From the IMG/VR virus record IMGVR_UViG_3300015262_000001, positions 1 through 64,000 of that record: DNA of 64,000 nt. The stretch is one strand, 5' to 3'. Position numbers and translations under genes: made by a program. Shown piece after piece: positions 49,439-62,127 of this stretch; position 1 is the first letter of the stretch, and each line of letters begins with the position of its first letter. The notes under the pieces were generated by a model. It worked only from the letters and a program-made list of their open reading frames with translations. It was not told the DNA's origin and made no database searches.

Positions 49439-50437
49439 TTACATGAAGAAGCCTTTGTCATCCGCACCGGCAGAGAGATCCTTCTGCTGGGTGAAGGTCC
49501 CTTGAGTTTCGACCTTGCGGGTTTCCATTGCTTCGATGTGTTTCTCCAGCTCTTTCAGAGCTTCGCCGTGGTCCAGGACCATGTGCAGTTCTTCGGCATT
49601 GCTTGGGCGTTTGACGCCGTCGGCAAACACGCCGGTGGAACGGATCACGGTGCCGTTGAAACGGGGGATGACCGCATCGCTGCTGCCGAACAGAGACGAC
49701 ACTGCAACCGGAACTTTGCCCTTGAAGTCGGCAACGCCTTTCTCGTCGTAGAAGCGAATACGCGACATGGACGGTGGGACGCCGTAGTGCTTGCTGAAGT
49801 TCAGCAGGTTCTTCAGGTCGGTGTGGTCTTGTTCCTTGTTGTCGTTGGTCAGGAACAGGCTGGCGACATCGAGCTTGTCGATGATCATCTGGTTGACTTC
49901 ACCGCGAGTGTTGGTCATGGTGTTATCGAATTCCATGTACGGCACAACGCGGTTCAGCGAACCTGGAGTGGTCAGCGACGCGTACGAGCGGTAGCTGTTC
50001 ACGACGTTGATTTCTTCGACCTGGGAGGTCTTGTCGTTGACGAAGCACAGTACGACCAGTTGATCGCGTTCGAACAGCATGCGTGCCAGAACGAAAGCCA
50101 GCATCGAACCAGTACCGCCGCCGGTGGAGCAGACGATGATGTTGTAATCGCGCGGTTTGTGTTTGGTCAGGAACTGAGTGATGAACTGTTCAGCCTGCGG
50201 GTAGTTGGTTGCTTTGACTTTACCCGAACCCTTGGCCTTCTGGTCAGGATCGTTGGCAACAGCCATTTGCACAACTTCGAAGAGGTCGCTGGAACTGTTG
50301 CGGTCTGAGGAGTCCAGACCGACGAAGTAGGCGTTCTTGTTGCTGTCGGTGTGAGTACCCTTTTTCAGAGCCACGCCGATGTTAATACCGGTACCACCGC
50401 AGAGGAAATACGCCAAATCCGAGTTATTTGCATTCAT
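49439..50437 (-). CDS. phuZ: Phage tubulin PhuZ
   Basis: CGGTGINIG, the tubulin signature GGGTGS, DHTDL (T7 loop) and a short C-terminal tail ending DDKGFFM. Confidence 0.95.
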   Translation of the reverse strand: MNANNSDLAYFLCGGTGINIGVALKKGTHTDSNKNAYFVGLDSSDRNSSSDLFEVVQMAVANDPDQKAKGSGKVKATNYPQAEQFITQFLTKHKPRDYNIIVCSTGGGTGSMLAFVLARMLFERDQLVVLCFVNDKTSQVEEINVVNSYRSYASLTTPGSLNRVVPYMEFDNTMTNTRGEVNQMIIDKLDVASLFLTNDNKEQDHTDLKNLLNFSKHYGVPPSMSRIRFYDEKGVADFKGKVPVAVSSLFGSSDAVIPRFNGTVIRSTGVFADGVKRPSNAEELHMVLDHGEALKELEKHIEAMETRKVETQGTFTQQKDLSAGADDKGFFM

Positions 50438-50998: not shown

Positions 50999-51607
50999 CT
51001 ATGCGACCTTGGCGTCGGCTTCAGCGATAGCTTCTTCGGTAACCGCCTTTGCAAGCTTGTCCATGGTTTCCTCGGTGGTTTCGAAGGTAGGACGCTTCGA
51101 AGGAGTTTCTGGCGCCGGTGGTACCTCGAAGATCTGGAGATTACCCCCGCACTCGATACACAGGTTGATCGCCGCCTTCACACCTGCACGGGCTGACTTA
51201 CCGATGGACATCACCGACAACGCGAATTGCGCACCGTCCCCAACGGCGAGGAATCCAGTTGCTGGGATGATGTTCAGTACGGTGTGCTTGTCGCTCTTGG
51301 TGGACTCAGACGGTATGACCTGGTAAGCCACGCCGTTTTCACCGATCACGATTGCGTCGAAGGTGTTATCGAACGACGACGCATCTGAGGTGTTATCGAT
51401 CCCGCTCTGCAACAACTTGCGGAACTGCGGATAAACCACAGGAGTGCCGATCACAGCAAATGCAATTGCCTTCACCCCGCAGATCTCCCAGTACTCCCCT
51501 TCGTCTGGTGTGTAGATCTTGCGGAACTCACTTGGACTGATCTGGCCGTCAGTGTGGATGGCCGAGTCGGTGACCATAAGTTTACCGTCGAATGCTGCTA
51601 CGGACAT
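50999..51607 (-). CDS. HslV/proteasome-beta-like Ntn protein, catalytically degenerate paralogue
   Basis: Clear paralogue of the upstream gene (DGKLMVTDS...RKI...EGEYW...SIGKSA), but with no Thr1, GSG changed to GDG and DKYSGG changed to CIECGG. Confidence 0.75.
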   Translation of the reverse strand: MSVAAFDGKLMVTDSAIHTDGQISPSEFRKIYTPDEGEYWEICGVKAIAFAVIGTPVVYPQFRKLLQSGIDNTSDASSFDNTFDAIVIGENGVAYQVIPSESTKSDKHTVLNIIPATGFLAVGDGAQFALSVMSIGKSARAGVKAAINLCIECGGNLQIFEVPPAPETPSKRPTFETTEETMDKLAKAVTEEAIAEADAKVA

Positions 51608-51622
51608 GATTTGTTTTCCTGA

Positions 51623-52168
51623 TCAGGCGGGTGTCGCTTCGGCGACGACCACTGGCCGCGTGGATTTGATGGCTGGTTTTGGTGGCAGATCCCAGATTTG
51701 CAGATCACCGCCCGAGTACTTGTCCAGTCGGATGGCTGCTCGTACTGCTGCCTCAGCAGATTTGCCGATAGACAGAACCCCCAAGACAAACGGCTGACCC
51801 GAACCTGCTGCTGCTGGTGGGAACAGGGGGAGCAAGTCCGTGTGAAGCGGCCGACCCTGACGCTTGTTGACCTGCCAGCGATAGCATTGCCCGTCCTCGG
51901 TGATCAGCAATGCGGCGAAACCAATTTCGTCGATGTCTTCGACTTTCGTTTTGTGAGTAACCCCGATACGGAGTTTCTCTTTGACCACTTCGATCGATTT
52001 ACCATCTCCCGAGATACCGGCGGCCAATACACGGTGGCCCTGTACATCCCAGTATTCCCCTTCCTCGGGTTCGTGTATCTTCCTGAGACCACCCGGTTGA
52101 ATAATCATACCGGCAGTGGCTTGTGAATCGCTGACCAGTTTCTTTCCGTCCCACGCTACGCTCGTCAT
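51623..52168 (-). CDS. HslV/proteasome-beta-like Ntn peptidase
   Basis: M-T-S-V-A-W-D-G (Thr1), DSQ, RKI (Lys33 equivalent), AGSG and DKYSGG. Confidence 0.8.
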   Translation of the reverse strand: MTSVAWDGKKLVSDSQATAGMIIQPGGLRKIHEPEEGEYWDVQGHRVLAAGISGDGKSIEVVKEKLRIGVTHKTKVEDIDEIGFAALLITEDGQCYRWQVNKRQGRPLHTDLLPLFPPAAAGSGQPFVLGVLSIGKSAEAAVRAAIRLDKYSGGDLQIWDLPPKPAIKSTRPVVVAEATPA

Positions 52169-55612: not shown

Positions 55613-56044
55613 ATGGATCTTCAACACTTCGTAGGAACGAAAATCGTTAAATCGAAACCGATGACAAAATCGGTATATAACGGTTACAGAGGCTGGGACA
55701 TGCCGGCTGATGAAGATGGCGCTGAAGAAGGCTATCTGGTCGAGTATTTGGACGGCGGTAAACCAAATCACCCTGACCACGCCGGTTACATTTCCTGGGC
55801 GCCCAAGGAACAGCATGAGAATGCTTACCTGAACATGGGCAACATGGGTAGCTATACACCCGAGCAACAAAAGCTTTTCGCGGAGAAAGTGCAGACACAG
55901 CACCGTATTGCAAGACTGCGCGAAGAGATCAATAGCGTTGACCCGCACTTGGTAACCGAGTGGGAAATTCAGCTCATGGTAACTCAGTTATCCTGTCTGG
56001 AAACTCTACTCAATGTGGTAACCGAACGGACGGAGTGGTTTTAA
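55613..56044 (+). CDS. Two-domain small phage protein (GTK...EGYLVEY...YISW.PK domain plus helical hairpin)
   Basis: 143 aa, GGAG SD. The N-terminal domain pattern is common in phage proteins; the function is unproven. Confidence 0.7.
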   Translation: MDLQHFVGTKIVKSKPMTKSVYNGYRGWDMPADEDGAEEGYLVEYLDGGKPNHPDHAGYISWAPKEQHENAYLNMGNMGSYTPEQQKLFAEKVQTQHRIARLREEINSVDPHLVTEWEIQLMVTQLSCLETLLNVVTERTEWF

Positions 56045-56063: not shown

Positions 56064-56103
56064 TAACTACTCCCCTAGCCCGTCAAGGCTAGGGGAGTAG
56101 TTA
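56064..56103. terminator. Bidirectional terminator hairpin
   Basis: 17-bp stem TAACTACTCCCCTAGCC / GGCTAGGGGAGTAGTTA. Confidence 0.85.
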
Positions 56104-56115
56104 TGTTTGGTTGAC

Positions 56116-56796
56116 TTATACGACGCCGTGGGTTACAGACAGTTCAGAGATCACCGACACCGATCCGTCATCTACCGGAGTATCGTCGGTGTAGTCGACC
56201 TGGTTGTACACACCACCATGGAATTGAAGAACCTGACCTTGCCAGGAGGTATCCAGTTTCCATGCCATCTTGATCGACGGTACGCCATTGCACAGAACGT
56301 TGATCGACACCGACCCATTGGAAGTTACACCAATGCTGAGCTTAAACGTAGCGCCCAGAGGCACGTCGTTATGGATAACGGTATTGACGACGTCTGGTTT
56401 ATCGAAACTGCTACGGAACCCGACGGTGATTTGGCCTTTGTTCCAGAACACCTTCAGTGGCGGAGTAGTGGCATTTTTGACATGGATCTGCCCTACCACT
56501 ACTTTACCGGCCCAGTTGACTTTGCCAAGAGTAATCTCTTGACGACTCCAATGCCGAGCAGCGCTAGACAAGGACCAGTATTCCGGCTCTTTCCATTCGC
56601 AACGAGTACGTTTGGTGCTTTTGCTGGACGCCCCTTTTGTTGGAGCAGTGAACATTACAGAACCGCTGTCCCATTGGGTGATTACCGACGGGCATTGCAC
56701 CAAGGCAAGATCACCCATGAGTTCCAACGCCAAAGGGTTGGTATCCGAAACAGGCAGCGGCGTAGCAATGAGGAACTTAGTGATATCAACTGACAT
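56116..56796 (-). CDS. Polysaccharide lyase family 7 (alginate lyase-like)
   Basis: RCEWKE (R-x-E-L-R variant), GQIH and FHGGVYNQ (YFKAGxY variant). By eye it is colinear with recalled Pseudomonas PL7 lyases. GGAG SD, no signal peptide. Confidence 0.85.
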   Translation of the reverse strand: MSVDITKFLIATPLPVSDTNPLALELMGDLALVQCPSVITQWDSGSVMFTAPTKGASSKSTKRTRCEWKEPEYWSLSSAARHWSRQEITLGKVNWAGKVVVGQIHVKNATTPPLKVFWNKGQITVGFRSSFDKPDVVNTVIHNDVPLGATFKLSIGVTSNGSVSINVLCNGVPSIKMAWKLDTSWQGQVLQFHGGVYNQVDYTDDTPVDDGSVSVISELSVTHGVV

Positions 56797-56816
56797 GATG
56801 TCTCCAGGAAGTTGGT

Positions 56817-59800
56817 TTATGCGGCACGCTTACGTTCCCGCAGCATGCGTTTAGCCCGTTCGAGTTTAGCTTCTTCGATCAGACTGTCTACGGTGAGGAG
56901 TTTAGCCGTTTCAACTGGGAGCAATCTGCTGAGCTTGTTGATCTCAGCTTCCAGCCTCATGGCGAGGATATTGTCGTTGGTGTTCAACAACTCTTCCGTC
57001 AACCCATTCACGCGTTTCTTGATGTTGTCCAAGAACGATACAACACTTGGATCCACTTCAGGAGCGTTCTTGTGTTTACCGGCATCCAGTAGGTTACGAG
57101 TTTCCGTTAACGCAATCCCGGTAGGAATCCCGTACATCGGCTTGTTCATACCCAGCTTGATAAACCAGTACGTTAACAACCAGGCAATAACCAAGTCATC
57201 GTGCTGTTTGCTATCGTGGTCGATTCGATCGCCCCGAGTCTTGAGGTTGATCAGCTCATCTGCAAGCCTATCGTAGTGCAGACCATACCCGGTGTTACCC
57301 ACAGCCTCCTGAATCAAGCCGTACAGAACCTGACGAGACGTTTGTGTCGTCACGAACCCGAAGTACTGCTTGTATTTCAGGTAGAAGCTTTTACTGCGAT
57401 GGGCAAACTTGGTATGCTGTACCGCCTCGTACTCCTTCGCATGGTTAACAGGATCCTGGAAGACCGTGTTGTAGATGCGAGTGAATGGATCCATCCCTTT
57501 AGCTGGTAGCATGACCAACAGGTTATCGATCATGTGGTGTGCGTAGTTACGTTCAATCACCAACAGACTGTTCTCGAAGGTAGACAACATGTCTACGATA
57601 ATGCCCGTCACGTCGTCCAGGAACGCCAACTGATAACGACCCACCCCAATCACCTTACCGGTTCGCATGCTGCGGATAATCAGCGTACAGGCATCCTTGT
57701 TGATAGCCGACGAGGTATCCACCCCAATGAGGAAGAAGTCATTGTAACTCTTCTTCGCCATCTCCAGCAGTTCTTGCTGCGTGACAAAGAAGTCTATAAA
57801 CAGACCACTGTCACGATACTCCTTACTCCAAACCTTATCCCGCTTAACGTTGTTGATCGCTTCACGAGTGATGTCATCGAACACACGGTTCTCACCGTCT
57901 TCAACCCACATCAGAAGCAAGTCGATTTTGGCTTTAGCCAAACTGAGGTTCAAGCTGTCGATGGTTTCCTGTACCCAGGACTTGTCTTTACCCAGCTGCA
58001 AGAAGTTATACACCAGAGCCACAGATGGAGAAGTGGTCTTCTTCGGAGATGCTTTCAACAAGCGCATCTTCAGGTGACTTTCACTGTACGAGTCAAAGAA
58101 CTTCTCACGCCACTCAGTCGACGTCATCAGTTTCTCAAACATGAACGCGCCACTTGGGTGCAGGGTCGTGTTTGGTGTCGTGATGTAACTGATCCCGTAA
58201 GGAATACCACTATCGCGACAAATCTCCATCTCTGTCAAAGCAGAAGGAGAGCATCCGTTGATGATCGCCTCGATCCAGTTGATGTAACCAGGCTCGTCGT
58301 AGTTCGTGGTACCTACCGTGAGACCCCGTCCAAGGTCACCTGCGGCGTCTTCACCCATCTGGGGTACCGAGATGGTCAGGGTGTTAACGTGCTCCTCCCC
58401 AAACGCTTTATACGTCAGGTAGTTACCCGCATCCTTGTCCTTCCAGGTGGGGTTAACCAGGTACTTCGGCAGACAGGTTCTGATTTTCTTGATGGCATCG
58501 ATGAACTGAGCCCGGTTATCTGACTTCAACGTTACCAGGTGAGACTTGTAGCCTCGCCCCATGATGTACGTCAGCCAGAAAGCAATAACCTGTACCGATA
58601 CTGTGTTGTGAGTTACCAGGAAGTCATCGGTAACGTAGAGGTGTTCCTCGTTATCGACCTCGATACAGGTACAAGGGGCTTCACCGTGATACTCAATGCG
58701 TTCCACAAACAAACGGTTATCGAAAACGAACTCGTCCTCAACATGCTTGTATTTAAACAACGCCATCGAATGCGGCAAGGTTACAGTGATCTTGCTACCA
58801 GCCTTGGAAGCCGTACCGCCCAAACTCCGCGCCAGGTATTGAACATGACCGCCTACGAGTCTGCTAGTGGTGCTGTAGACCACACCCTCCTCACCGACTA
58901 TCCCTTGGTCCAGAAACGCTTGCAGTACAGCCAGCCGATCTTCCAGAGCCCCTTCCAGGTAGTTAGACGGCAGACCCAGGTCTGGATCGAAGGTAATCTT
59001 GACATTCTCGTCAGTCGAGTGGATCTCACGACGATTACCCTTCTTCACCAGCTCTAAACTTTCAGGCAGGTTATTCTCAATCCAGGCGTCAGCCGCTTCG
59101 GAGACCTTCTTGATCAGGATGAAGCCACCAATACGCTGACCGCCAATTAGTGTCCCCATCACATAAGGGTCAATCGCCAAGTTCTTGGCAACGCCCTTCT
59201 CCGCTTCAATCAGCGGGAACTCAAGCTTTACACCATCCTTGAGTTTGGTGATCATCTCGGCGGTGGTGTAGTCGTCCCAGATTGGATCATCGTTAACTAC
59301 ACGACTGTGGTCTGCTAAAGTCCAGAGGTGTTCAGGTCCAGCAGTCACATGACGACCATCACTGGCGTAAACACGGTACAAGCGTTTGATACCCTGAGCG
59401 TGGATACCGATGACTGTCGATGGGTTACCATAACGGTCAATGACTTGATCACCAGCTTGCAGGTCGCCAATTCGTACCCAGGTCCCATCTGCTTTACGCA
59501 CCTTGTCATTATCGTCCTGGTACTTGCCCTGCTGACGAGGCATGATCATGTACTGGGTGATGTGGTTCAGGTAGTTCCAGATGAAACTGACGTTACCGCG
59601 ATTCGCCAAGAACTGGCGGTCAGCACGCAGTTTACAAACCTCACGAAGGAAGTACCAGAAGTTGGTCTCCGATTCGTGCATGATCATGACCTTCTGTTCG
59701 TTGGTCAGATTCTCGTCGTAAGGGTCTACACCTACCAAGGCCGGATTGTTCAGTTGCAGTAGGAAGTAGTAGTTCTTGATACCCTGCTGCCGGAAGATCT

Positions 59801-60101
59801 CAGCAGTTCGCAGAAAGCTGGTATTACGGGTGGTCAGATCCGGGGCTGCCTTGTAACGAGCAAAGTCCTTGAGGAATCTAACCGTTTTGATCTTGCTCAG
59901 GCTGTCTTCATTGAAGTGAGCCATGACCAGTTCGTCTTCAGTACGCTTAGCCCAGTCCACGCGGTTCTTGCGATCGTCGATCAATTCAGGTGGTAGGTTT
60001 TGTGCACCCAGATAAGTGATCAGTTCTTTTGCAAACTTCAGTTGGCCTTCGTCTACAGTACTTTCTGATTCAATCGTGTCCATGATAGGTTCCCATTGCA
60101 C
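56817..60101 (-). CDS. terL: Terminase large subunit with an intein (start may be 60083)
   Basis: Walker A PRQQGK|T, Walker B TNYDE, TTP motif III and nuclease GVDTSS...DDLVIA. Confidence 0.93.
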   Translation of the reverse strand: MQWEPIMDTIESESTVDEGQLKFAKELITYLGAQNLPPELIDDRKNRVDWAKRTEDELVMAHFNEDSLSKIKTVRFLKDFARYKAAPDLTTRNTSFLRTAEIFRQQGIKNYYFLLQLNNPALVGVDPYDENLTNEQKVMIMHESETNFWYFLREVCKLRADRQFLANRGNVSFIWNYLNHITQYMIMPRQQGKYQDDNDKVRKADGTWVRIGDLQAGDQVIDRYGNPSTVIGIHAQGIKRLYRVYASDGRHVTAGPEHLWTLADHSRVVNDDPIWDDYTTAEMITKLKDGVKLEFPLIEAEKGVAKNLAIDPYVMGTLIGGQRIGGFILIKKVSEAADAWIENNLPESLELVKKGNRREIHSTDENVKITFDPDLGLPSNYLEGALEDRLAVLQAFLDQGIVGEEGVVYSTTSRLVGGHVQYLARSLGGTASKAGSKITVTLPHSMALFKYKHVEDEFVFDNRLFVERIEYHGEAPCTCIEVDNEEHLYVTDDFLVTHNTVSVQVIAFWLTYIMGRGYKSHLVTLKSDNRAQFIDAIKKIRTCLPKYLVNPTWKDKDAGNYLTYKAFGEEHVNTLTISVPQMGEDAAGDLGRGLTVGTTNYDEPGYINWIEAIINGCSPSALTEMEICRDSGIPYGISYITTPNTTLHPSGAFMFEKLMTSTEWREKFFDSYSESHLKMRLLKASPKKTTSPSVALVYNFLQLGKDKSWVQETIDSLNLSLAKAKIDLLLMWVEDGENRVFDDITREAINNVKRDKVWSKEYRDSGLFIDFFVTQQELLEMAKKSYNDFFLIGVDTSSAINKDACTLIIRSMRTGKVIGVGRYQLAFLDDVTGIIVDMLSTFENSLLVIERNYAHHMIDNLLVMLPAKGMDPFTRIYNTVFQDPVNHAKEYEAVQHTKFAHRSKSFYLKYKQYFGFVTTQTSRQVLYGLIQEAVGNTGYGLHYDRLADELINLKTRGDRIDHDSKQHDDLVIAWLLTYWFIKLGMNKPMYGIPTGIALTETRNLLDAGKHKNAPEVDPSVVSFLDNIKKRVNGLTEELLNTNDNILAMRLEAEINKLSRLLPVETAKLLTVDSLIEEAKLERAKRMLRERKRAA
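58605..59522 (-). mobile_element. Class-3 intein (306 aa) in the TerL P-loop with a degenerate LAGLIDADG region
   Basis: Begins YQDDNDKV and ends FLVTHN|T; block-B GPEHLW, block-F CTCIEV and block-G THN. Confidence 0.9.
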
Positions 60102-60138: not shown

Positions 60139-60166
60139 CAGGCCCAGGGTGTTACCCCCAGGCCTG
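60139..60166 (-). terminator. Terminator of the GGGTGTTACCC-loop family upstream of terL
   Basis: CAGGCC...GGG-TGTTA-CCC...GGCCTG, then TTTATTTT on the minus strand. Confidence 0.7.
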
Positions 60167-60181
60167 TTGTAACGACGTTGC

Positions 60182-60373
60182 TTACTCGGCTACCACTTCC
60201 TTGAGACGTTCGTAGCTCGCCACAGCACGGTCGTCGTAGATCAGCACTTGACGGCTTTCACCGTTTTGCAGCGTGAACTCTTCGATCGCTTTGTCGGTTG
60301 CTACGTTGAATACCTTGACAACGACTTCCTTGTTGTCAGCACAGTGAGCGTCCACTTTAACTTGCGAGGTCAT
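60182..60373 (-). CDS. Small beta-rich hypothetical protein
   Basis: 63 aa, GGAG SD, highly expressed codon bias, followed by a terminator. Confidence 0.7.
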   Translation of the reverse strand: MTSQVKVDAHCADNKEVVVKVFNVATDKAIEEFTLQNGESRQVLIYDDRAVASYERLKEVVAE

Positions 60374-60405: not shown

Positions 60406-62127
60406 TTAAGGCGCCAGCTCCACTGTTACACCGGTCATGCCGAGTTGCAGCTCAACACCAGACACCGACTTATTGATCCAGTTGATGTACCAGGTCTTGC
60501 CCTTCTGCATGGCAATGGTGATCGCGTTGTTTTGATTCCAGGCGGTAACCGGGAAACGCCACTTACGGCCATCTTCATGCATCAGATCGAAGTGTGTCGG
60601 GGTTGGTGCCTTGTCTTCGTTGAAGACATCGTAGCTCGGGTAAACCGACCAGTACATAACGTCCAGCCACTCATCCTGCGCATCCTGACCGTTAACGAGA
60701 CTGAACGTGGTGTTAACCCCGTTGTTGTTCGCCACGACATTCAGTGCAGTGTAAGACGGCTTACCGTAGGAGTAGTTGACACTCCAGCGATTGCCCGGGC
60801 CGTTGACATCCTTCAGCAGCACAATCTCGGTATGCTGAATGAACGGCACACTTTCGTACGTCGGGGCGACGTCCTTGAGATTGATGTTGAAGATGAGTGC
60901 CTGTGCCAGGCCGTACGCGGACGGCTTGTAGACCGGGCTCTTGTCGTTGTAAGTAACAACGGCAGTGACGTCGGTAAACGTCTTGCGATCCAAGTCGTAC
61001 AGGTAGTGCTGCAACCGGTAGCCGTTCTGCGTCGCGTCCCATTGAGGATAGGTGAAGATCCGTGGGCTGTAAGCACCCTTGGCTGCACCGGCCTCGAAGG
61101 TATACGTGTGACGGGCAAAGTCCGGGTTACCAGGCTGGGCGACATCGTGCTGTTCGTTAGCCGCCAATTTCTTGACCAGCACCACATCAGCAGTTTGACC
61201 TGGGAACTTCGGACGATACTCAGTTACCCCGTACAGGCTGTATTCACCGCCATTGACCGCAGCAGGTTCAGAAGTCGAACCGTCAGAGTAATGCGTAACC
61301 GCACGCAGCTCGACTGCCGACAACTGGACGTTAACCGGGATGATCAAACGATCACGATCGGTAACGTGTGTGAACCATGGCGACAACAGCTCAACACTGG
61401 TAACGTACTTGACACCGATGTTGTGGTCTTTCATGTACGACGAATGCTGAACCATCAACGGCTGAGCAGGCGGGATGAAGTTGTTACCCTCATCGAAGAA
61501 CACCAGCCAGGCGCGAGTGCCATCTGGCAGGGCCAGGTCGTTCTTGGTAACACTGAACGGACCAGTGGTCATGATCGACTTGTTCGTGTACTCGTTGATC
61601 AAGGCCAGTTTGACTGGAACCTTCTTGCTGATCATGTTCAACGATTGATCGTACTGAGCCGAGATGATATTCGACTCCACAGCAGAGCTACCCAGGTACA
61701 CAAACGCGTACGCTGCACCTGGGCGCATGATGGTGGCATCCACACGCGCCACGTTTGGACGGACCGAGTAATCGATCGACAGCAGCGCTTCACCAGCCAT
61801 TGGACCGCCACGGAGCCCGTAGATGTAGTCCTGATCACTGGTAGTCCCTTCATCAGCGTTCTGCAAGCGCCAAGGCACCAGCGTCGACTTCAGGGTAGCC
61901 TGCCAATCCACTTTAGCCACAAAGTAGATCATGCCGTTAGGGGTGTCGAACACCAACTCCCCTTCTTGCGGAACCACATACTTCGTCAGGTCACTAGGCG
62001 GATGGATGTCCGGGTCGTAGACGTTTTCGATGTAGTGGAAGTTCTTGCGCTCACCGGTGTTGAGGGGACTGATGTTCGTCCCCGCAACCGCAGCAATCGC
62101 GTTAGACAACGGCGACTGGTCAAACAT
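60406..62127 (-). CDS. Virion tail/baseplate structural protein with Ig-like segments
   Basis: 573 aa, beta-rich; VELRAVTHYSDG resembles bacterial Ig-like repeats. GAGG SD. Confidence 0.6.
   Translation of the reverse strand: MFDQSPLSNAIAAVAGTNISPLNTGERKNFHYIENVYDPDIHPPSDLTKYVVPQEGELVFDTPNGMIYFVAKVDWQATLKSTLVPWRLQNADEGTTSDQDYIYGLRGGPMAGEALLSIDYSVRPNVARVDATIMRPGAAYAFVYLGSSAVESNIISAQYDQSLNMISKKVPVKLALINEYTNKSIMTTGPFSVTKNDLALPDGTRAWLVFFDEGNNFIPPAQPLMVQHSSYMKDHNIGVKYVTSVELLSPWFTHVTDRDRLIIPVNVQLSAVELRAVTHYSDGSTSEPAAVNGGEYSLYGVTEYRPKFPGQTADVVLVKKLAANEQHDVAQPGNPDFARHTYTFEAGAAKGAYSPRIFTYPQWDATQNGYRLQHYLYDLDRKTFTDVTAVVTYNDKSPVYKPSAYGLAQALIFNINLKDVAPTYESVPFIQHTEIVLLKDVNGPGNRWSVNYSYGKPSYTALNVVANNNGVNTTFSLVNGQDAQDEWLDVMYWSVYPSYDVFNEDKAPTPTHFDLMHEDGRKWRFPVTAWNQNNAITIAMQKGKTWYINWINKSVSGVELQLGMTGVTVELAP

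What the first reader, a model, noticed from the sequence alone, without database searches (positions are those of the whole stretch)
56116..56796. Host-like PL7 alginate lyase directly downstream of terL
The three PL7 motifs are present in variant form (RCEWKE, QIH, FHGGVY) with the catalytic His and Tyr equivalents retained. It is a stand-alone cytoplasmic-type enzyme rather than a tailspike domain, 20 nt behind the terminase gene and so probably expressed late. It could be released at lysis to clear alginate from mucoid or biofilm Pseudomonas for progeny. The similarity to Pseudomonas PL7 proteins suggests capture from the host.
Basis: partly seen in the sequence, partly recalled or inferred. 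Interest (0 to 1): 0.6.

Follow-up and report, generated by a model that had tools for sequence, protein, structure and literature searches.

The report
Jumbo-phage PL7 alginate lyase gene
A giant rhizosphere Pseudomonas phage carries a small, intact alginate-lyase-type enzyme gene just after its DNA-packaging gene; the gene is real and under selection, but it comes from an old pool shared by phages and Pseudomonas genome islands, not from a recent theft from the host.

Summary
Window 56116-56796 (minus strand) encodes a 226-aa stand-alone PL7 domain (Pfam PF08787, E 5.8e-41, full length). The AlphaFold model has pLDDT 95 and best matches P. aeruginosa PA1167 (TM 0.83). The catalytic Arg65, Gln103, His105 and Tyr197 are invariant. 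There is no signal peptide. The gene starts 20 nt after terL, with a GGAG ribosome site, and hairpin terminators bracket the pair.

The host-capture reading is only partly supported. The phage is an EL-like, PhuZ-encoding jumbo phage (228.6 kb) from rhizosphere metagenomes. Its PL7 groups with about 25 other jumbo-phage copies (64-87% identity). It matches the phage's GC content and has dN/dS of about 0.07. It is only about 25-30% identical to the core Pseudomonas PL7.

The 52-61% identical "Pseudomonas" copies form a patchy accessory clade. Most lie downstream of a CI-like S24 repressor, some in lambdoid prophages and many in 2-3-gene islands. The transfer direction is unresolved.

Adjacency to terL is not conserved: close relatives carry the gene inverted in the same slot, and phage EL lacks it.

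Most likely function (inferred): a soluble endolytic alginate lyase released at lysis. This is a new member of a known kind, of moderate interest.

The parts
56116..56796 (-). PL7 (Alginate_lyase2) gene, 226 aa, a stand-alone catalytic domain
   Evidence: ORF. Pfam PF08787 E 5.8e-41, full length. phrog_31475 E 8e-97. AF2 pLDDT 95.4. Foldseek best match PA1167 1vav, TM 0.83. dN/dS 0.06-0.10.
56590..56604 (-). SA3 motif R65-C-E67-W-K69 (family consensus RXEXR)
   Evidence: R65 and E67 are invariant in 51 homologues. They align with RSELR of PA1167 and A1-II'. Motif definition is from PMC8618178.
56482..56490 (-). SA5 motif Q103-I-H105 (QXH); His105 is the predicted catalytic base
   Evidence: Q103 and H105 are invariant. 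They align with QIH of PA1167 and A1-II', where the His is H191.
56200..56226 (-). Variant SA4 motif Q191-F-H-G-G-V-Y197-N-Q199 (family consensus YXKAGXYXQ); Tyr197 is the predicted catalytic acid
   Evidence: H193, G194, G195, Y197, N198 and Q199 are invariant. Y197 aligns with Y284 of A1-II', and the Y284F entries show F at that column. The first Tyr and the Lys of the consensus are not retained.
56797..56816 (-). 20-nt terL-PL7 spacer with the ribosome-binding site GGAG at 56802-56805
   Evidence: Read from the sequence. The same spacer type is in relative L004. No terminator-like site lies in it.
56064..56103 (.). 17-bp hairpin between the PL7 gene and the convergent gene 55613-56044; a likely bidirectional terminator
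   Evidence: Terminator scan. Comparable hairpins stand at the same place in L003 and L004.
56817..60101 (-). Large terminase subunit gene (1094 aa) upstream on the same strand; carries an intein-like insert
   Evidence: phrog_2 E 3.9e-40. Phage EL gp011 is annotated as large terminase at the syntenic place.
60139..60166 (-). Hairpin plus T-run upstream of terL; a likely terminator of the preceding unit, so terL and PL7 look like a two-gene unit
   Evidence: Terminator scan and sequence.

Best explanation
The gene encodes a catalytically competent, soluble PL7 polysaccharide lyase with an open-cleft beta-jelly roll, of about 25 kDa. It should cleave polyuronate by beta-elimination. Arg65 and Gln103 neutralise the C6 carboxylate, His105 abstracts the C5 proton, and Tyr197 protonates the leaving O4.

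The most likely substrate is Pseudomonas alginate (polyM/MG). The enzyme has no export signal and no virion-anchoring domain. It is therefore made in the infected cell's cytoplasm, in this genome probably on a terL-PL7 transcript. It reaches its substrate only when the cell lyses, then thins the alginate matrix around neighbouring cells so that the very large virions can diffuse and adsorb.

In evolutionary terms it is an accessory cargo gene sitting in a variable slot at a convergent transcription junction. It belongs to an old PL7 clade shared by Pseudomonas jumbo phages and Pseudomonas accessory loci that include prophages. It is not a recent capture from the host chromosome.

Shown here: the family, fold, catalytic residues, selection, gene arrangement and phylogenetic position. 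Inferred: the substrate, the timing of expression, and release and benefit at lysis.
For: Family and fold: Pfam E 5.8e-41; AF2 pLDDT 95.4 and pTM 0.91; all top Foldseek matches are PL7 lyases, with PA1167 at TM 0.83.

Catalytic residues are invariant in 51 homologues and align with R146, Q189, H191 and Y284 of A1-II'.

Purifying selection: dN/dS 0.06-0.10, and 22 of 25 listed variant sites are third codon positions.

No signal peptide: residues 9-15 and 22-27 are modelled as beta-strands in a model with no low-confidence segment, and the Pfam domain spans residues 3-223.

Operon layout: 20-nt gap, GGAG site, flanking hairpins.

Host setting: the nearest isolates are Pseudomonas phage EL and its kin. 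All 123 bacterial homologues are in Pseudomonas. Every isolated phage carrying a homologue infects P. syringae, P. putida or P. koreensis. The phage comes from rhizosphere metagenomes.

Soluble depolymerases released at lysis are an established category (PMC5380687). Temperate phage AH02 places a distant PL7 with an esterase just upstream of its holin.

Old residence in phages: GC 51.1% against 50.5% for the window, and 41.6% against 41.6% in Psa21. The jumbo copies form one clade.
Against: No activity, expression or localisation data exist, and no RNA run holds the sequence.

The SA4 motif departs from the family consensus: the first Tyr is lost and Lys is replaced by an invariant His. SA3 ends in Lys rather than Arg. 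Specificity could therefore differ from that of characterised alginate lyases.

Linkage to terL is not conserved. L003, L022 and L008 carry the gene inverted, Psa21 has it in a tRNA/HNH region, and EL lacks it.

Homologues persist under selection in bacterial 2-3-gene islands, where no lysis would release them. That hints at a cytoplasmic function. PL7 also contains glucuronan lyases (7nde among the matches).
Confidence: 0.5

Rival explanations
1. The lyase is a virion component (tail- or baseplate-associated, or ejected) that digests alginate during adsorption, as classic virion-borne depolymerases do.
For: It lies beside packaging and virion genes: terL, and the virion structural protein at 60406-62127. 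In the P. putida phage Peetri, the homologue abuts a minor tail protein gene. The historical phage alginate lyases (PT-6 at 37 kDa, an Azotobacter phage at 30-35 kDa) are small (PMC5380687).
Against: The 226 aa are entirely the catalytic domain, with no N-terminal anchor or trimerisation module. Its position varies between relatives and is often far from structural genes, as in the Psa21 tRNA region. Homologues in prophage immunity regions and bacterial islands are not structural genes.
Confidence: 0.12
2. The enzyme acts inside the cell, either on a cytoplasmic or imported uronate oligomer or to shut down alginate production. That would mean host takeover in the jumbo phage and a conversion or regulatory function in bacteria carrying the S24 repressor-DUF1654-PL7 module.
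For: None of the homologues aligned (51 in A2) has an N-terminal extension that could be a signal peptide. Bacterial copies are kept under purifying selection in 2-3-gene islands where lysis is not expected (dN/dS 0.075). 55 of 86 bacterial loci pair the gene with an HTH-S24 repressor. The solved relative PA1167 is likewise the size of the bare catalytic domain (222 aa).
Against: From general knowledge, alginate polymer forms at the inner membrane and enters the periplasm, so no cytoplasmic polymer substrate is known in Pseudomonas. There is no PADLOC or NCBIfam match that points to a defence or regulatory role.
Confidence: 0.12
3. It is an active lyase whose substrate is not alginate but another polyuronate, such as glucuronan or a uronic-acid-containing capsule or O-antigen.
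For: PL7 includes glucuronan lyases; 7nde appears in both the sequence-profile and fold matches. The clade has its own invariant SA4 variant, FHGGxYNQxDY. The review notes that motif-based rules for specificity are unreliable (PMC8618178).
Against: The best structural and sequence matches are alginate lyases, PA1167 first. The clade is confined to Pseudomonas and its phages, and from general knowledge fluorescent pseudomonads all make alginate.
Confidence: 0.15
4. It was recently captured from the host chromosome.
For: The closest non-jumbo homologues (52-61% identity) are all in Pseudomonas genomes.
Against: The window's copy nests among jumbo-phage copies. The jumbo clade is sister to the bacterial clade, not inside it (support 72/82 and 88/60). 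GC and GC3 match the phage, not the 56-60% GC of bacterial copies. dS against even the closest relatives exceeds 1. The core host PL7 is only 24-32% identical.
Confidence: 0.05

Closest known systems
PA1167 of Pseudomonas aeruginosa (PL7; PDB 1VAV)
   Same: It is the best sequence and fold match (E 6e-8 with the single sequence, 1.4e-12 with the profile; TM 0.83). It has the same size (222 aa) and is a single beta-jelly-roll domain with a QIH motif. From general knowledge, it has no signal peptide.
   Different: Identity is only about 22-25%. PA1167 keeps the canonical YFKAGxYxQ motif, whereas this clade has xFHGGVYNQ. The PA1167 type is a near-universal chromosomal gene in Pseudomonas (256 of 301 genomes) and is separated from this clade by a very long branch.
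A1-II' of Sphingomonas sp. A1 (PL7; PDB 2CWS, 2ZAA, 2ZAB)
   Same: The catalytic residues map one to one: R146/Q189/H191/Y284 onto R65/Q103/H105/Y197. From general knowledge, it is a cytoplasmic enzyme.
   Different: Identity is about 20%. It belongs to a bacterial alginate-assimilation system rather than a phage.
Psa21 gp419, 'polysaccharide lyase family 7 protein' (P. syringae jumbo phage)
   Same: It belongs to the same jumbo-phage PL7 clade, at 61% identity and 224 aa. It is already annotated as PL7 in RefSeq.
   Different: It lies among tRNA genes and HNH endonuclease genes, not next to terL. It is not mentioned in the genome announcement and has not been characterised.
S24 repressor (+/- DUF1654) - PL7 module in Pseudomonas genomes (e.g. 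the P. putida CP039371 prophage)
   Same: These copies are 52-61% identical, of the same length, with the same invariant motifs.
   Different: They sit downstream of a CI-like repressor. At least 13 loci are lambdoid prophages, and about 37 loci lie in conserved chromosomal surroundings, many of them as 2-3-gene islands. Their GC is 56-60%.
Biochemically described phage alginate lyases (Pseudomonas phage PT-6; an Azotobacter vinelandii phage)
   Same: They are small phage-associated alginate lyases of 30-37 kDa that act on host alginate (PMC5380687).
   Different: Their sequences are listed as not determined, so homology cannot be tested. They are reported as virion-associated.
Pseudomonas phage AH02 gp62 'alginate lyase' with esterase gp63
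   Same: It is a phage PL7 without an N-terminal extension, in a Pseudomonas phage.
   Different: Identity is only 27%, and the protein is longer (285 aa). It lies beside an esterase and the holin in a 39-kb phage, and sits on a very long branch in the tree.
Tailspike-type phage depolymerases (e.g. the pectate-lyase-like spikes of phages phi15 and AF)
   Same: The overall purpose is the same: to breach exopolysaccharide.
   Different: Those are 78-79 kDa proteins annotated as pectin lyases (the AF one a trimer) and listed among virion-associated enzymes; from general knowledge they are beta-helix spikes anchored to the virion. This one is a 25-kDa jelly roll with no anchor.

Membership tests
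Polysaccharide lyase family 7 (Pfam PF08787 Alginate_lyase2) | Sequence match to the family profile above the curated cut-off | tested here: met
   141 bits against a cut-off of 29.7, E 5.8e-41, profile positions 1-225 of 225.
Polysaccharide lyase family 7 (Pfam PF08787 Alginate_lyase2) | Beta-jelly-roll (beta-sandwich) fold | tested here: met
   The AF2 model has pLDDT 95.4 and is almost all beta. The top 40 or so Foldseek matches are PL7 structures, with TM 0.83 to 1vav.
Polysaccharide lyase family 7 (Pfam PF08787 Alginate_lyase2) | SA5 motif QXH with the catalytic His | tested here: met
   Q103-I-H105 is invariant in 51 homologues and aligns with QIH of PA1167 and A1-II'.
Polysaccharide lyase family 7 (Pfam PF08787 Alginate_lyase2) | SA3 motif RXEXR | tested here: inconclusive
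   The motif here is RCEWK. R65 and E67 are invariant, but the last Arg is Lys, or Thr/Ser in some bacterial copies.
Polysaccharide lyase family 7 (Pfam PF08787 Alginate_lyase2) | SA4 motif YXKAGXYXQ with the catalytic Tyr | tested here: inconclusive
   The catalytic Tyr197 and Gln199 are retained and invariant. The first Tyr is replaced by a variable residue and Lys by an invariant His193.
Polysaccharide lyase family 7 (Pfam PF08787 Alginate_lyase2) | Beta-eliminative cleavage of alginate or another polyuronate | not testable with these tools
   This needs an enzyme assay.
Virion-associated (tailspike or fibre) depolymerase | An N-terminal virion-anchoring domain plus a large multimeric catalytic module | tested here: not met
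   The Pfam domain covers residues 3-223 of 226, and the model is one compact domain.
Soluble phage depolymerase released at lysis | Made during infection, absent from virions, active in the lysate | not testable with these tools
   No RNA runs were found, and there are no proteome data for this phage or for Psa21.
Recently host-derived auxiliary gene | Nested within a host clade, with host-like base composition | tested here: not met
   The jumbo clade is sister to the bacterial clades, not nested in them. GC is 51.1% against 50.5% for the phage and 56-60% for bacterial copies.
Secreted or periplasmic alginate lyase (AlgL-like localisation) | An N-terminal signal peptide | tested here: not met
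   The N-terminus MSVDITKFLIATPLPVS lacks the charged and hydrophobic pattern of a signal peptide, and residues 9-15 form a beta-strand in the confidently modelled N-terminus. No dedicated predictor was available.

The most novel reading that the evidence does not exclude
These proteins may form a distinct PL7 subfamily with its own active-site variant (xFHGGxYNQxDY) that moves between nucleus-forming jumbo phages and the HTH-S24 repressor/DUF1654 module found in Pseudomonas prophages and genome islands. Its real job may be cytoplasmic, for example cutting an intracellular uronate polymer or oligomer to reprogram exopolysaccharide output. In bacteria it may be under SOS-cleavable repressor control. 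That would differ from a simple lysis-released matrix enzyme.
Probability: 0.1. Interest if true: 0.65.

Novelty: new member of a known kind. Interest (0 to 1): 0.4.

Why it matters
Phage alginate lyases have been known biochemically for decades. The phage depolymerase review read here (PMC5380687) lists their sequences as not determined. This clade offers sequence-defined, compact (25 kDa) and probably soluble candidates from phages of plant-associated Pseudomonas. They could be tested as anti-biofilm enzymes and as determinants of jumbo-phage spread in alginate matrices.

The evolutionary picture is the more instructive part. One small enzyme gene is shared by strictly lytic jumbo phages, lambdoid prophages and repressor-linked genome islands of the same host genus. 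It moves between slots and strands within genomes. This also warns against reading "similar to host proteins" as "captured from the host".

Tried and rejected
- **DNA search against phages:** a megablast of the region found only a 45-nt chance-level hit, so no close isolate is available.
- **PADLOC and NCBIfam scans:** no match, so nothing ties the protein to a known defence system or a named equivalog.
- **Literature:** searches for a characterised phage or prophage PL7 found nothing specific, and the Psa21 paper does not mention the gene.
- **"All bacterial copies are prophage genes":** I first held this view. Pfam scans of conserved flanks showed ordinary chromosomal genes around many copies, so I softened it to "phage-type module, partly in prophages".
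- **Sigma-70 promoter scan:** no enrichment (5 found against 5.6 expected). It says nothing here, because from general knowledge phiKZ-like phages use their own RNA polymerases.
- **Expression evidence:** no RNA run holds the stretch.
- **EL promoter:** the annotated EL promoter showed no evident likeness by eye to the region upstream of terL; no search was run.
- **Not run:** the exhaustive profile search, because the family was already clear. Longer fusion relatives of this clade were therefore not looked for. The word search sees only proteins of 124-395 aa.
- **Other checks:** the model's coordinates were not examined, so active-site geometry rests on alignments.

Full report
**1. What is there**

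Window 56116-56796 holds a 226-aa ORF on the minus strand. It matches Pfam PF08787 (Alginate_lyase2, which is CAZy family PL7) over the whole profile, with E 5.8e-41. It also matches an unnamed phage family, phrog_31475, with E 8e-97.

An AlphaFold2 model built on 51 homologues is very confident (pLDDT 95.4, pTM 0.91) and almost entirely beta. Foldseek against the PDB returns only PL7 lyases at the top. The best is P. aeruginosa PA1167 (1vav, TM 0.83), followed by the Klebsiella AlyA (4ozx) and Sphingomonas A1-II'.

The family's three conserved regions are RXEXR, QXH and YXKAGXYXQ (PMC8618178). Here they read as follows.
- RXEXR is RCEWK (residues 65-69).
- QXH is QIH (residues 103-105).
- YXKAGXYXQ is QFHGGVYNQ (residues 191-199).

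Profile alignment to A1-II' puts Arg65, Gln103, His105 and Tyr197 on Arg146, Gln189, His191 and Tyr284. The Y284F mutant entries show Phe exactly at the Tyr197 column. All four residues are invariant in 51 homologues. The departures from the consensus are also clade-wide: the first Tyr of SA4 is lost, Lys is replaced by an invariant His193, and the last Arg of SA3 is Lys.

The N-terminus is part of the folded domain and there is no signal peptide.

**2. It is a live gene and a real arrangement**

Pairwise dN/dS against jumbo-phage relatives is 0.06-0.10. In contigs of an independent rhizosphere run (X3), a variant about 96-97% identical carries 22 of its 25 listed substitutions inside the ORF on third codon positions of the minus-strand frame. 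Another independent run (X2) has one contig spanning 55600-59553 with a single difference. It bridges the convergent neighbour, the hairpin, the PL7 gene and the end of terL.

**3. Surroundings**

The genome is a complete 228.6-kb virus record with terminal repeats. The window encodes PhuZ tubulin, two HslV-like peptidases, a DNA polymerase and virion proteins. The closest isolates are Pseudomonas phage EL and its kin, about 61% identical in a virion protein. The runs that hold the sequence are rhizosphere metagenomes.

Upstream on the same strand lies terL (56817-60101). The gap is 20 nt with GGAG six bases before the ATG. A hairpin with a T-run precedes terL (60139-60166). A 17-bp hairpin (56064-56103) separates the PL7 gene from the convergent gene 55613-56044. 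In this genome terL and PL7 therefore look like a two-gene unit between two terminators.

**4. The position is a variable slot, not a conserved linkage**

- Phage EL has terL followed directly by the convergent gp012-gp014 and has no PL7.
- Relative L004 (terL 91% identical) has the window's arrangement.
- L003, L022 and L008 (terL 80% and 66% identical) carry the gene in the same slot but on the other strand. There it is the last gene of the gp014/gp013-like operon and convergent to terL. In L003 its start overlaps a small upstream ORF.
- In L005 and L006 the gene lies between terL and the virion protein gene.
- In Psa21 it lies among tRNA and HNH genes.
- In the P. putida phage Peetri, a 41% identical form ends an operon that faces a tail gene.

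The gene behaves as mobile cargo placed at the boundaries of transcription units. "Late because it is behind terL" holds at best for this genome.

**5. Where it comes from**

The word-based protein search found 406 relatives. Pseudomonas-named proteins at 54-58% follow.

A scan of one genome per species found 123 relatives, all in Pseudomonas (the fluorescens, mandelii, putida and syringae groups). The gene is patchy and sometimes present twice in one genome.

A genus-wide Pfam search shows that most Pseudomonas genomes (256 of 301) have a PL7. The common one, however, scores 205-225 bits and is taken here, from its higher family score and near-universal presence, to be the PA1167 type. It is only 24-32% identical to the window's protein.

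In maximum-likelihood trees the topology is (core PL7, (Peetri, (jumbo clade, (bacterial clade A, bacterial clade C)))).
- The branch to the core enzymes is about 5 substitutions per site.
- The 26 jumbo rows form one clade with moderate support (72/82).
- The bacterial clades are well supported (100/100 and 98/93).
- Their union is weakly supported (88/60).

The window's nearest kin are other jumbo copies (87%, 86% and 83% identity). The gene's GC equals that of its phage in both cases checked: 51.1% against 50.5% here, and 41.6% against 41.6% in Psa21. Bacterial copies have 56-60% GC.

PL7 is 72-74% identical between the window and L005/L006, although their terminases are only 26-40% identical. 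This points to exchange among jumbo-phage lineages.

Together these results argue against a recent host capture. The direction of the old transfer cannot be told.

**6. What the "host" copies are**

The P. putida CP039371 copy lies inside a lambdoid prophage. That prophage carries an integrase, lambda P, DnaT, NinX and a Q antiterminator. The PL7 gene sits just downstream of the S24 repressor and a DUF1654 gene.

Across 86 bacterial or provirus loci, the counts are as follows.
- 55 have a CI-like HTH-S24 repressor (phrog_4) upstream on the same strand.
- 28 have DUF1654 (phrog_2707).
- At least 13 share lambdoid genes with that prophage.
- 15 came from IMG/VR provirus predictions.
- About 37 sit in conserved, ordinary chromosomal surroundings. 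These include shikimate dehydrogenase/glyoxalase, KaiC/response regulator and isochorismatase/permease contexts. There the copy is a 2-3-gene island or stands alone.

The bacterial clade is thus best described as a module that carries phage-type genes. It lies partly in live-looking prophages and partly in small islands that may be prophage remnants. My first impression that all copies are prophage genes was too strong.

**7. Function**

The chemistry (beta-elimination with a His base and a Tyr acid) follows from the conserved residues and from established PL7 mechanism, taken from general knowledge. The mutant structures H191N and Y284F in the PDB list are consistent with it. The compact, PA1167-sized domain suggests an open-cleft endolytic enzyme; this is an inference.

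Alginate is the most likely substrate. All best matches are alginate lyases, and the clade is confined to Pseudomonas and its phages. The variant SA4 motif and the presence of glucuronan lyases in PL7 leave room for another polyuronate.

With no export signal and no virion anchor, the simplest route to the substrate is release at lysis. That category of soluble depolymerase is long known (PMC5380687). AH02's arrangement of PL7, esterase and holin fits the idea.

The persistence of signal-less copies under selection in bacterial islands is the main observation this model does not explain.

**8. Verdict**

This is a new member of a known kind. Relatives are already annotated as PL7 or alginate lyase in Psa21 and AH02, but I found no report of a characterised one. 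Interest is moderate (0.4). It lies mainly in the gene pool shared by jumbo phages, prophages and genome islands, and in having sequence-defined candidates for phage alginate lyases.

Noticed in passing
window 58605-59522 (minus strand; terL residues 194-499): The terminase carries a 306-aa intein-like insert inside the Walker A motif (PRQQGK | insert | T). It ends in THN followed by Thr and has no N-terminal Cys or Ser. It also has a Cys in the block-F-like stretch PCTCIEV, which from general knowledge resembles class 3 inteins. The distant relatives L005 and L006 lack the insert. EL's 1088-aa terL probably has it.
   Followed up: partly
L003 7715-8678, L022, L008 (compared with window 56116-56796): In the closest relatives the PL7 gene sits in the same inter-operon slot but on the opposite strand. 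In L003 its start overlaps a small upstream ORF. How a single gene was flipped or re-inserted between two convergent units is unexplained.
   Followed up: partly
L031 5345-8675; L152 5535-7675; L048 8976-10672: A recurrent Pseudomonas module has an HTH-S24 (CI-like) repressor, often a divergent DUF1654 gene, then PL7. It occurs in intact lambdoid prophages and as a tiny island among ordinary chromosomal genes. Possible SOS control of the lyase was not tested.
   Followed up: partly
window 50999-51607 and 51623-52168 (minus strand): There are two tandem HslV-family peptidase genes (phrog_1040) next to PhuZ (49439-50437). Phage EL has one annotated at the syntenic place.
   Followed up: no
L150 (phage AH02) 3998-7034: A distant PL7 'alginate lyase' (27% identity, 285 aa) is followed by an esterase and then the holin. 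This may be an alginate-degrading and deacetylating pair placed beside the lysis genes.
   Followed up: no
window 56414-56484: In the same rhizosphere runs, short contigs of other organisms match only this 40-70-nt stretch around the QIH motif. Other PL7 homologues of the clade therefore seem to co-occur in those samples.
   Followed up: no
window 56107-56793 (plus strand): A 228-aa ORF mirrors the PL7 gene on the opposite strand. It is taken to be a shadow frame, because substitutions fall on third positions of the minus-strand frame. It was not searched on its own.
   Followed up: no
window 60183-60373 (minus strand): A small ORF of about 63 aa lies between the virion protein gene and the terminator upstream of terL. 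This is the same place as the 61-aa gp010 of phage EL.
   Followed up: no
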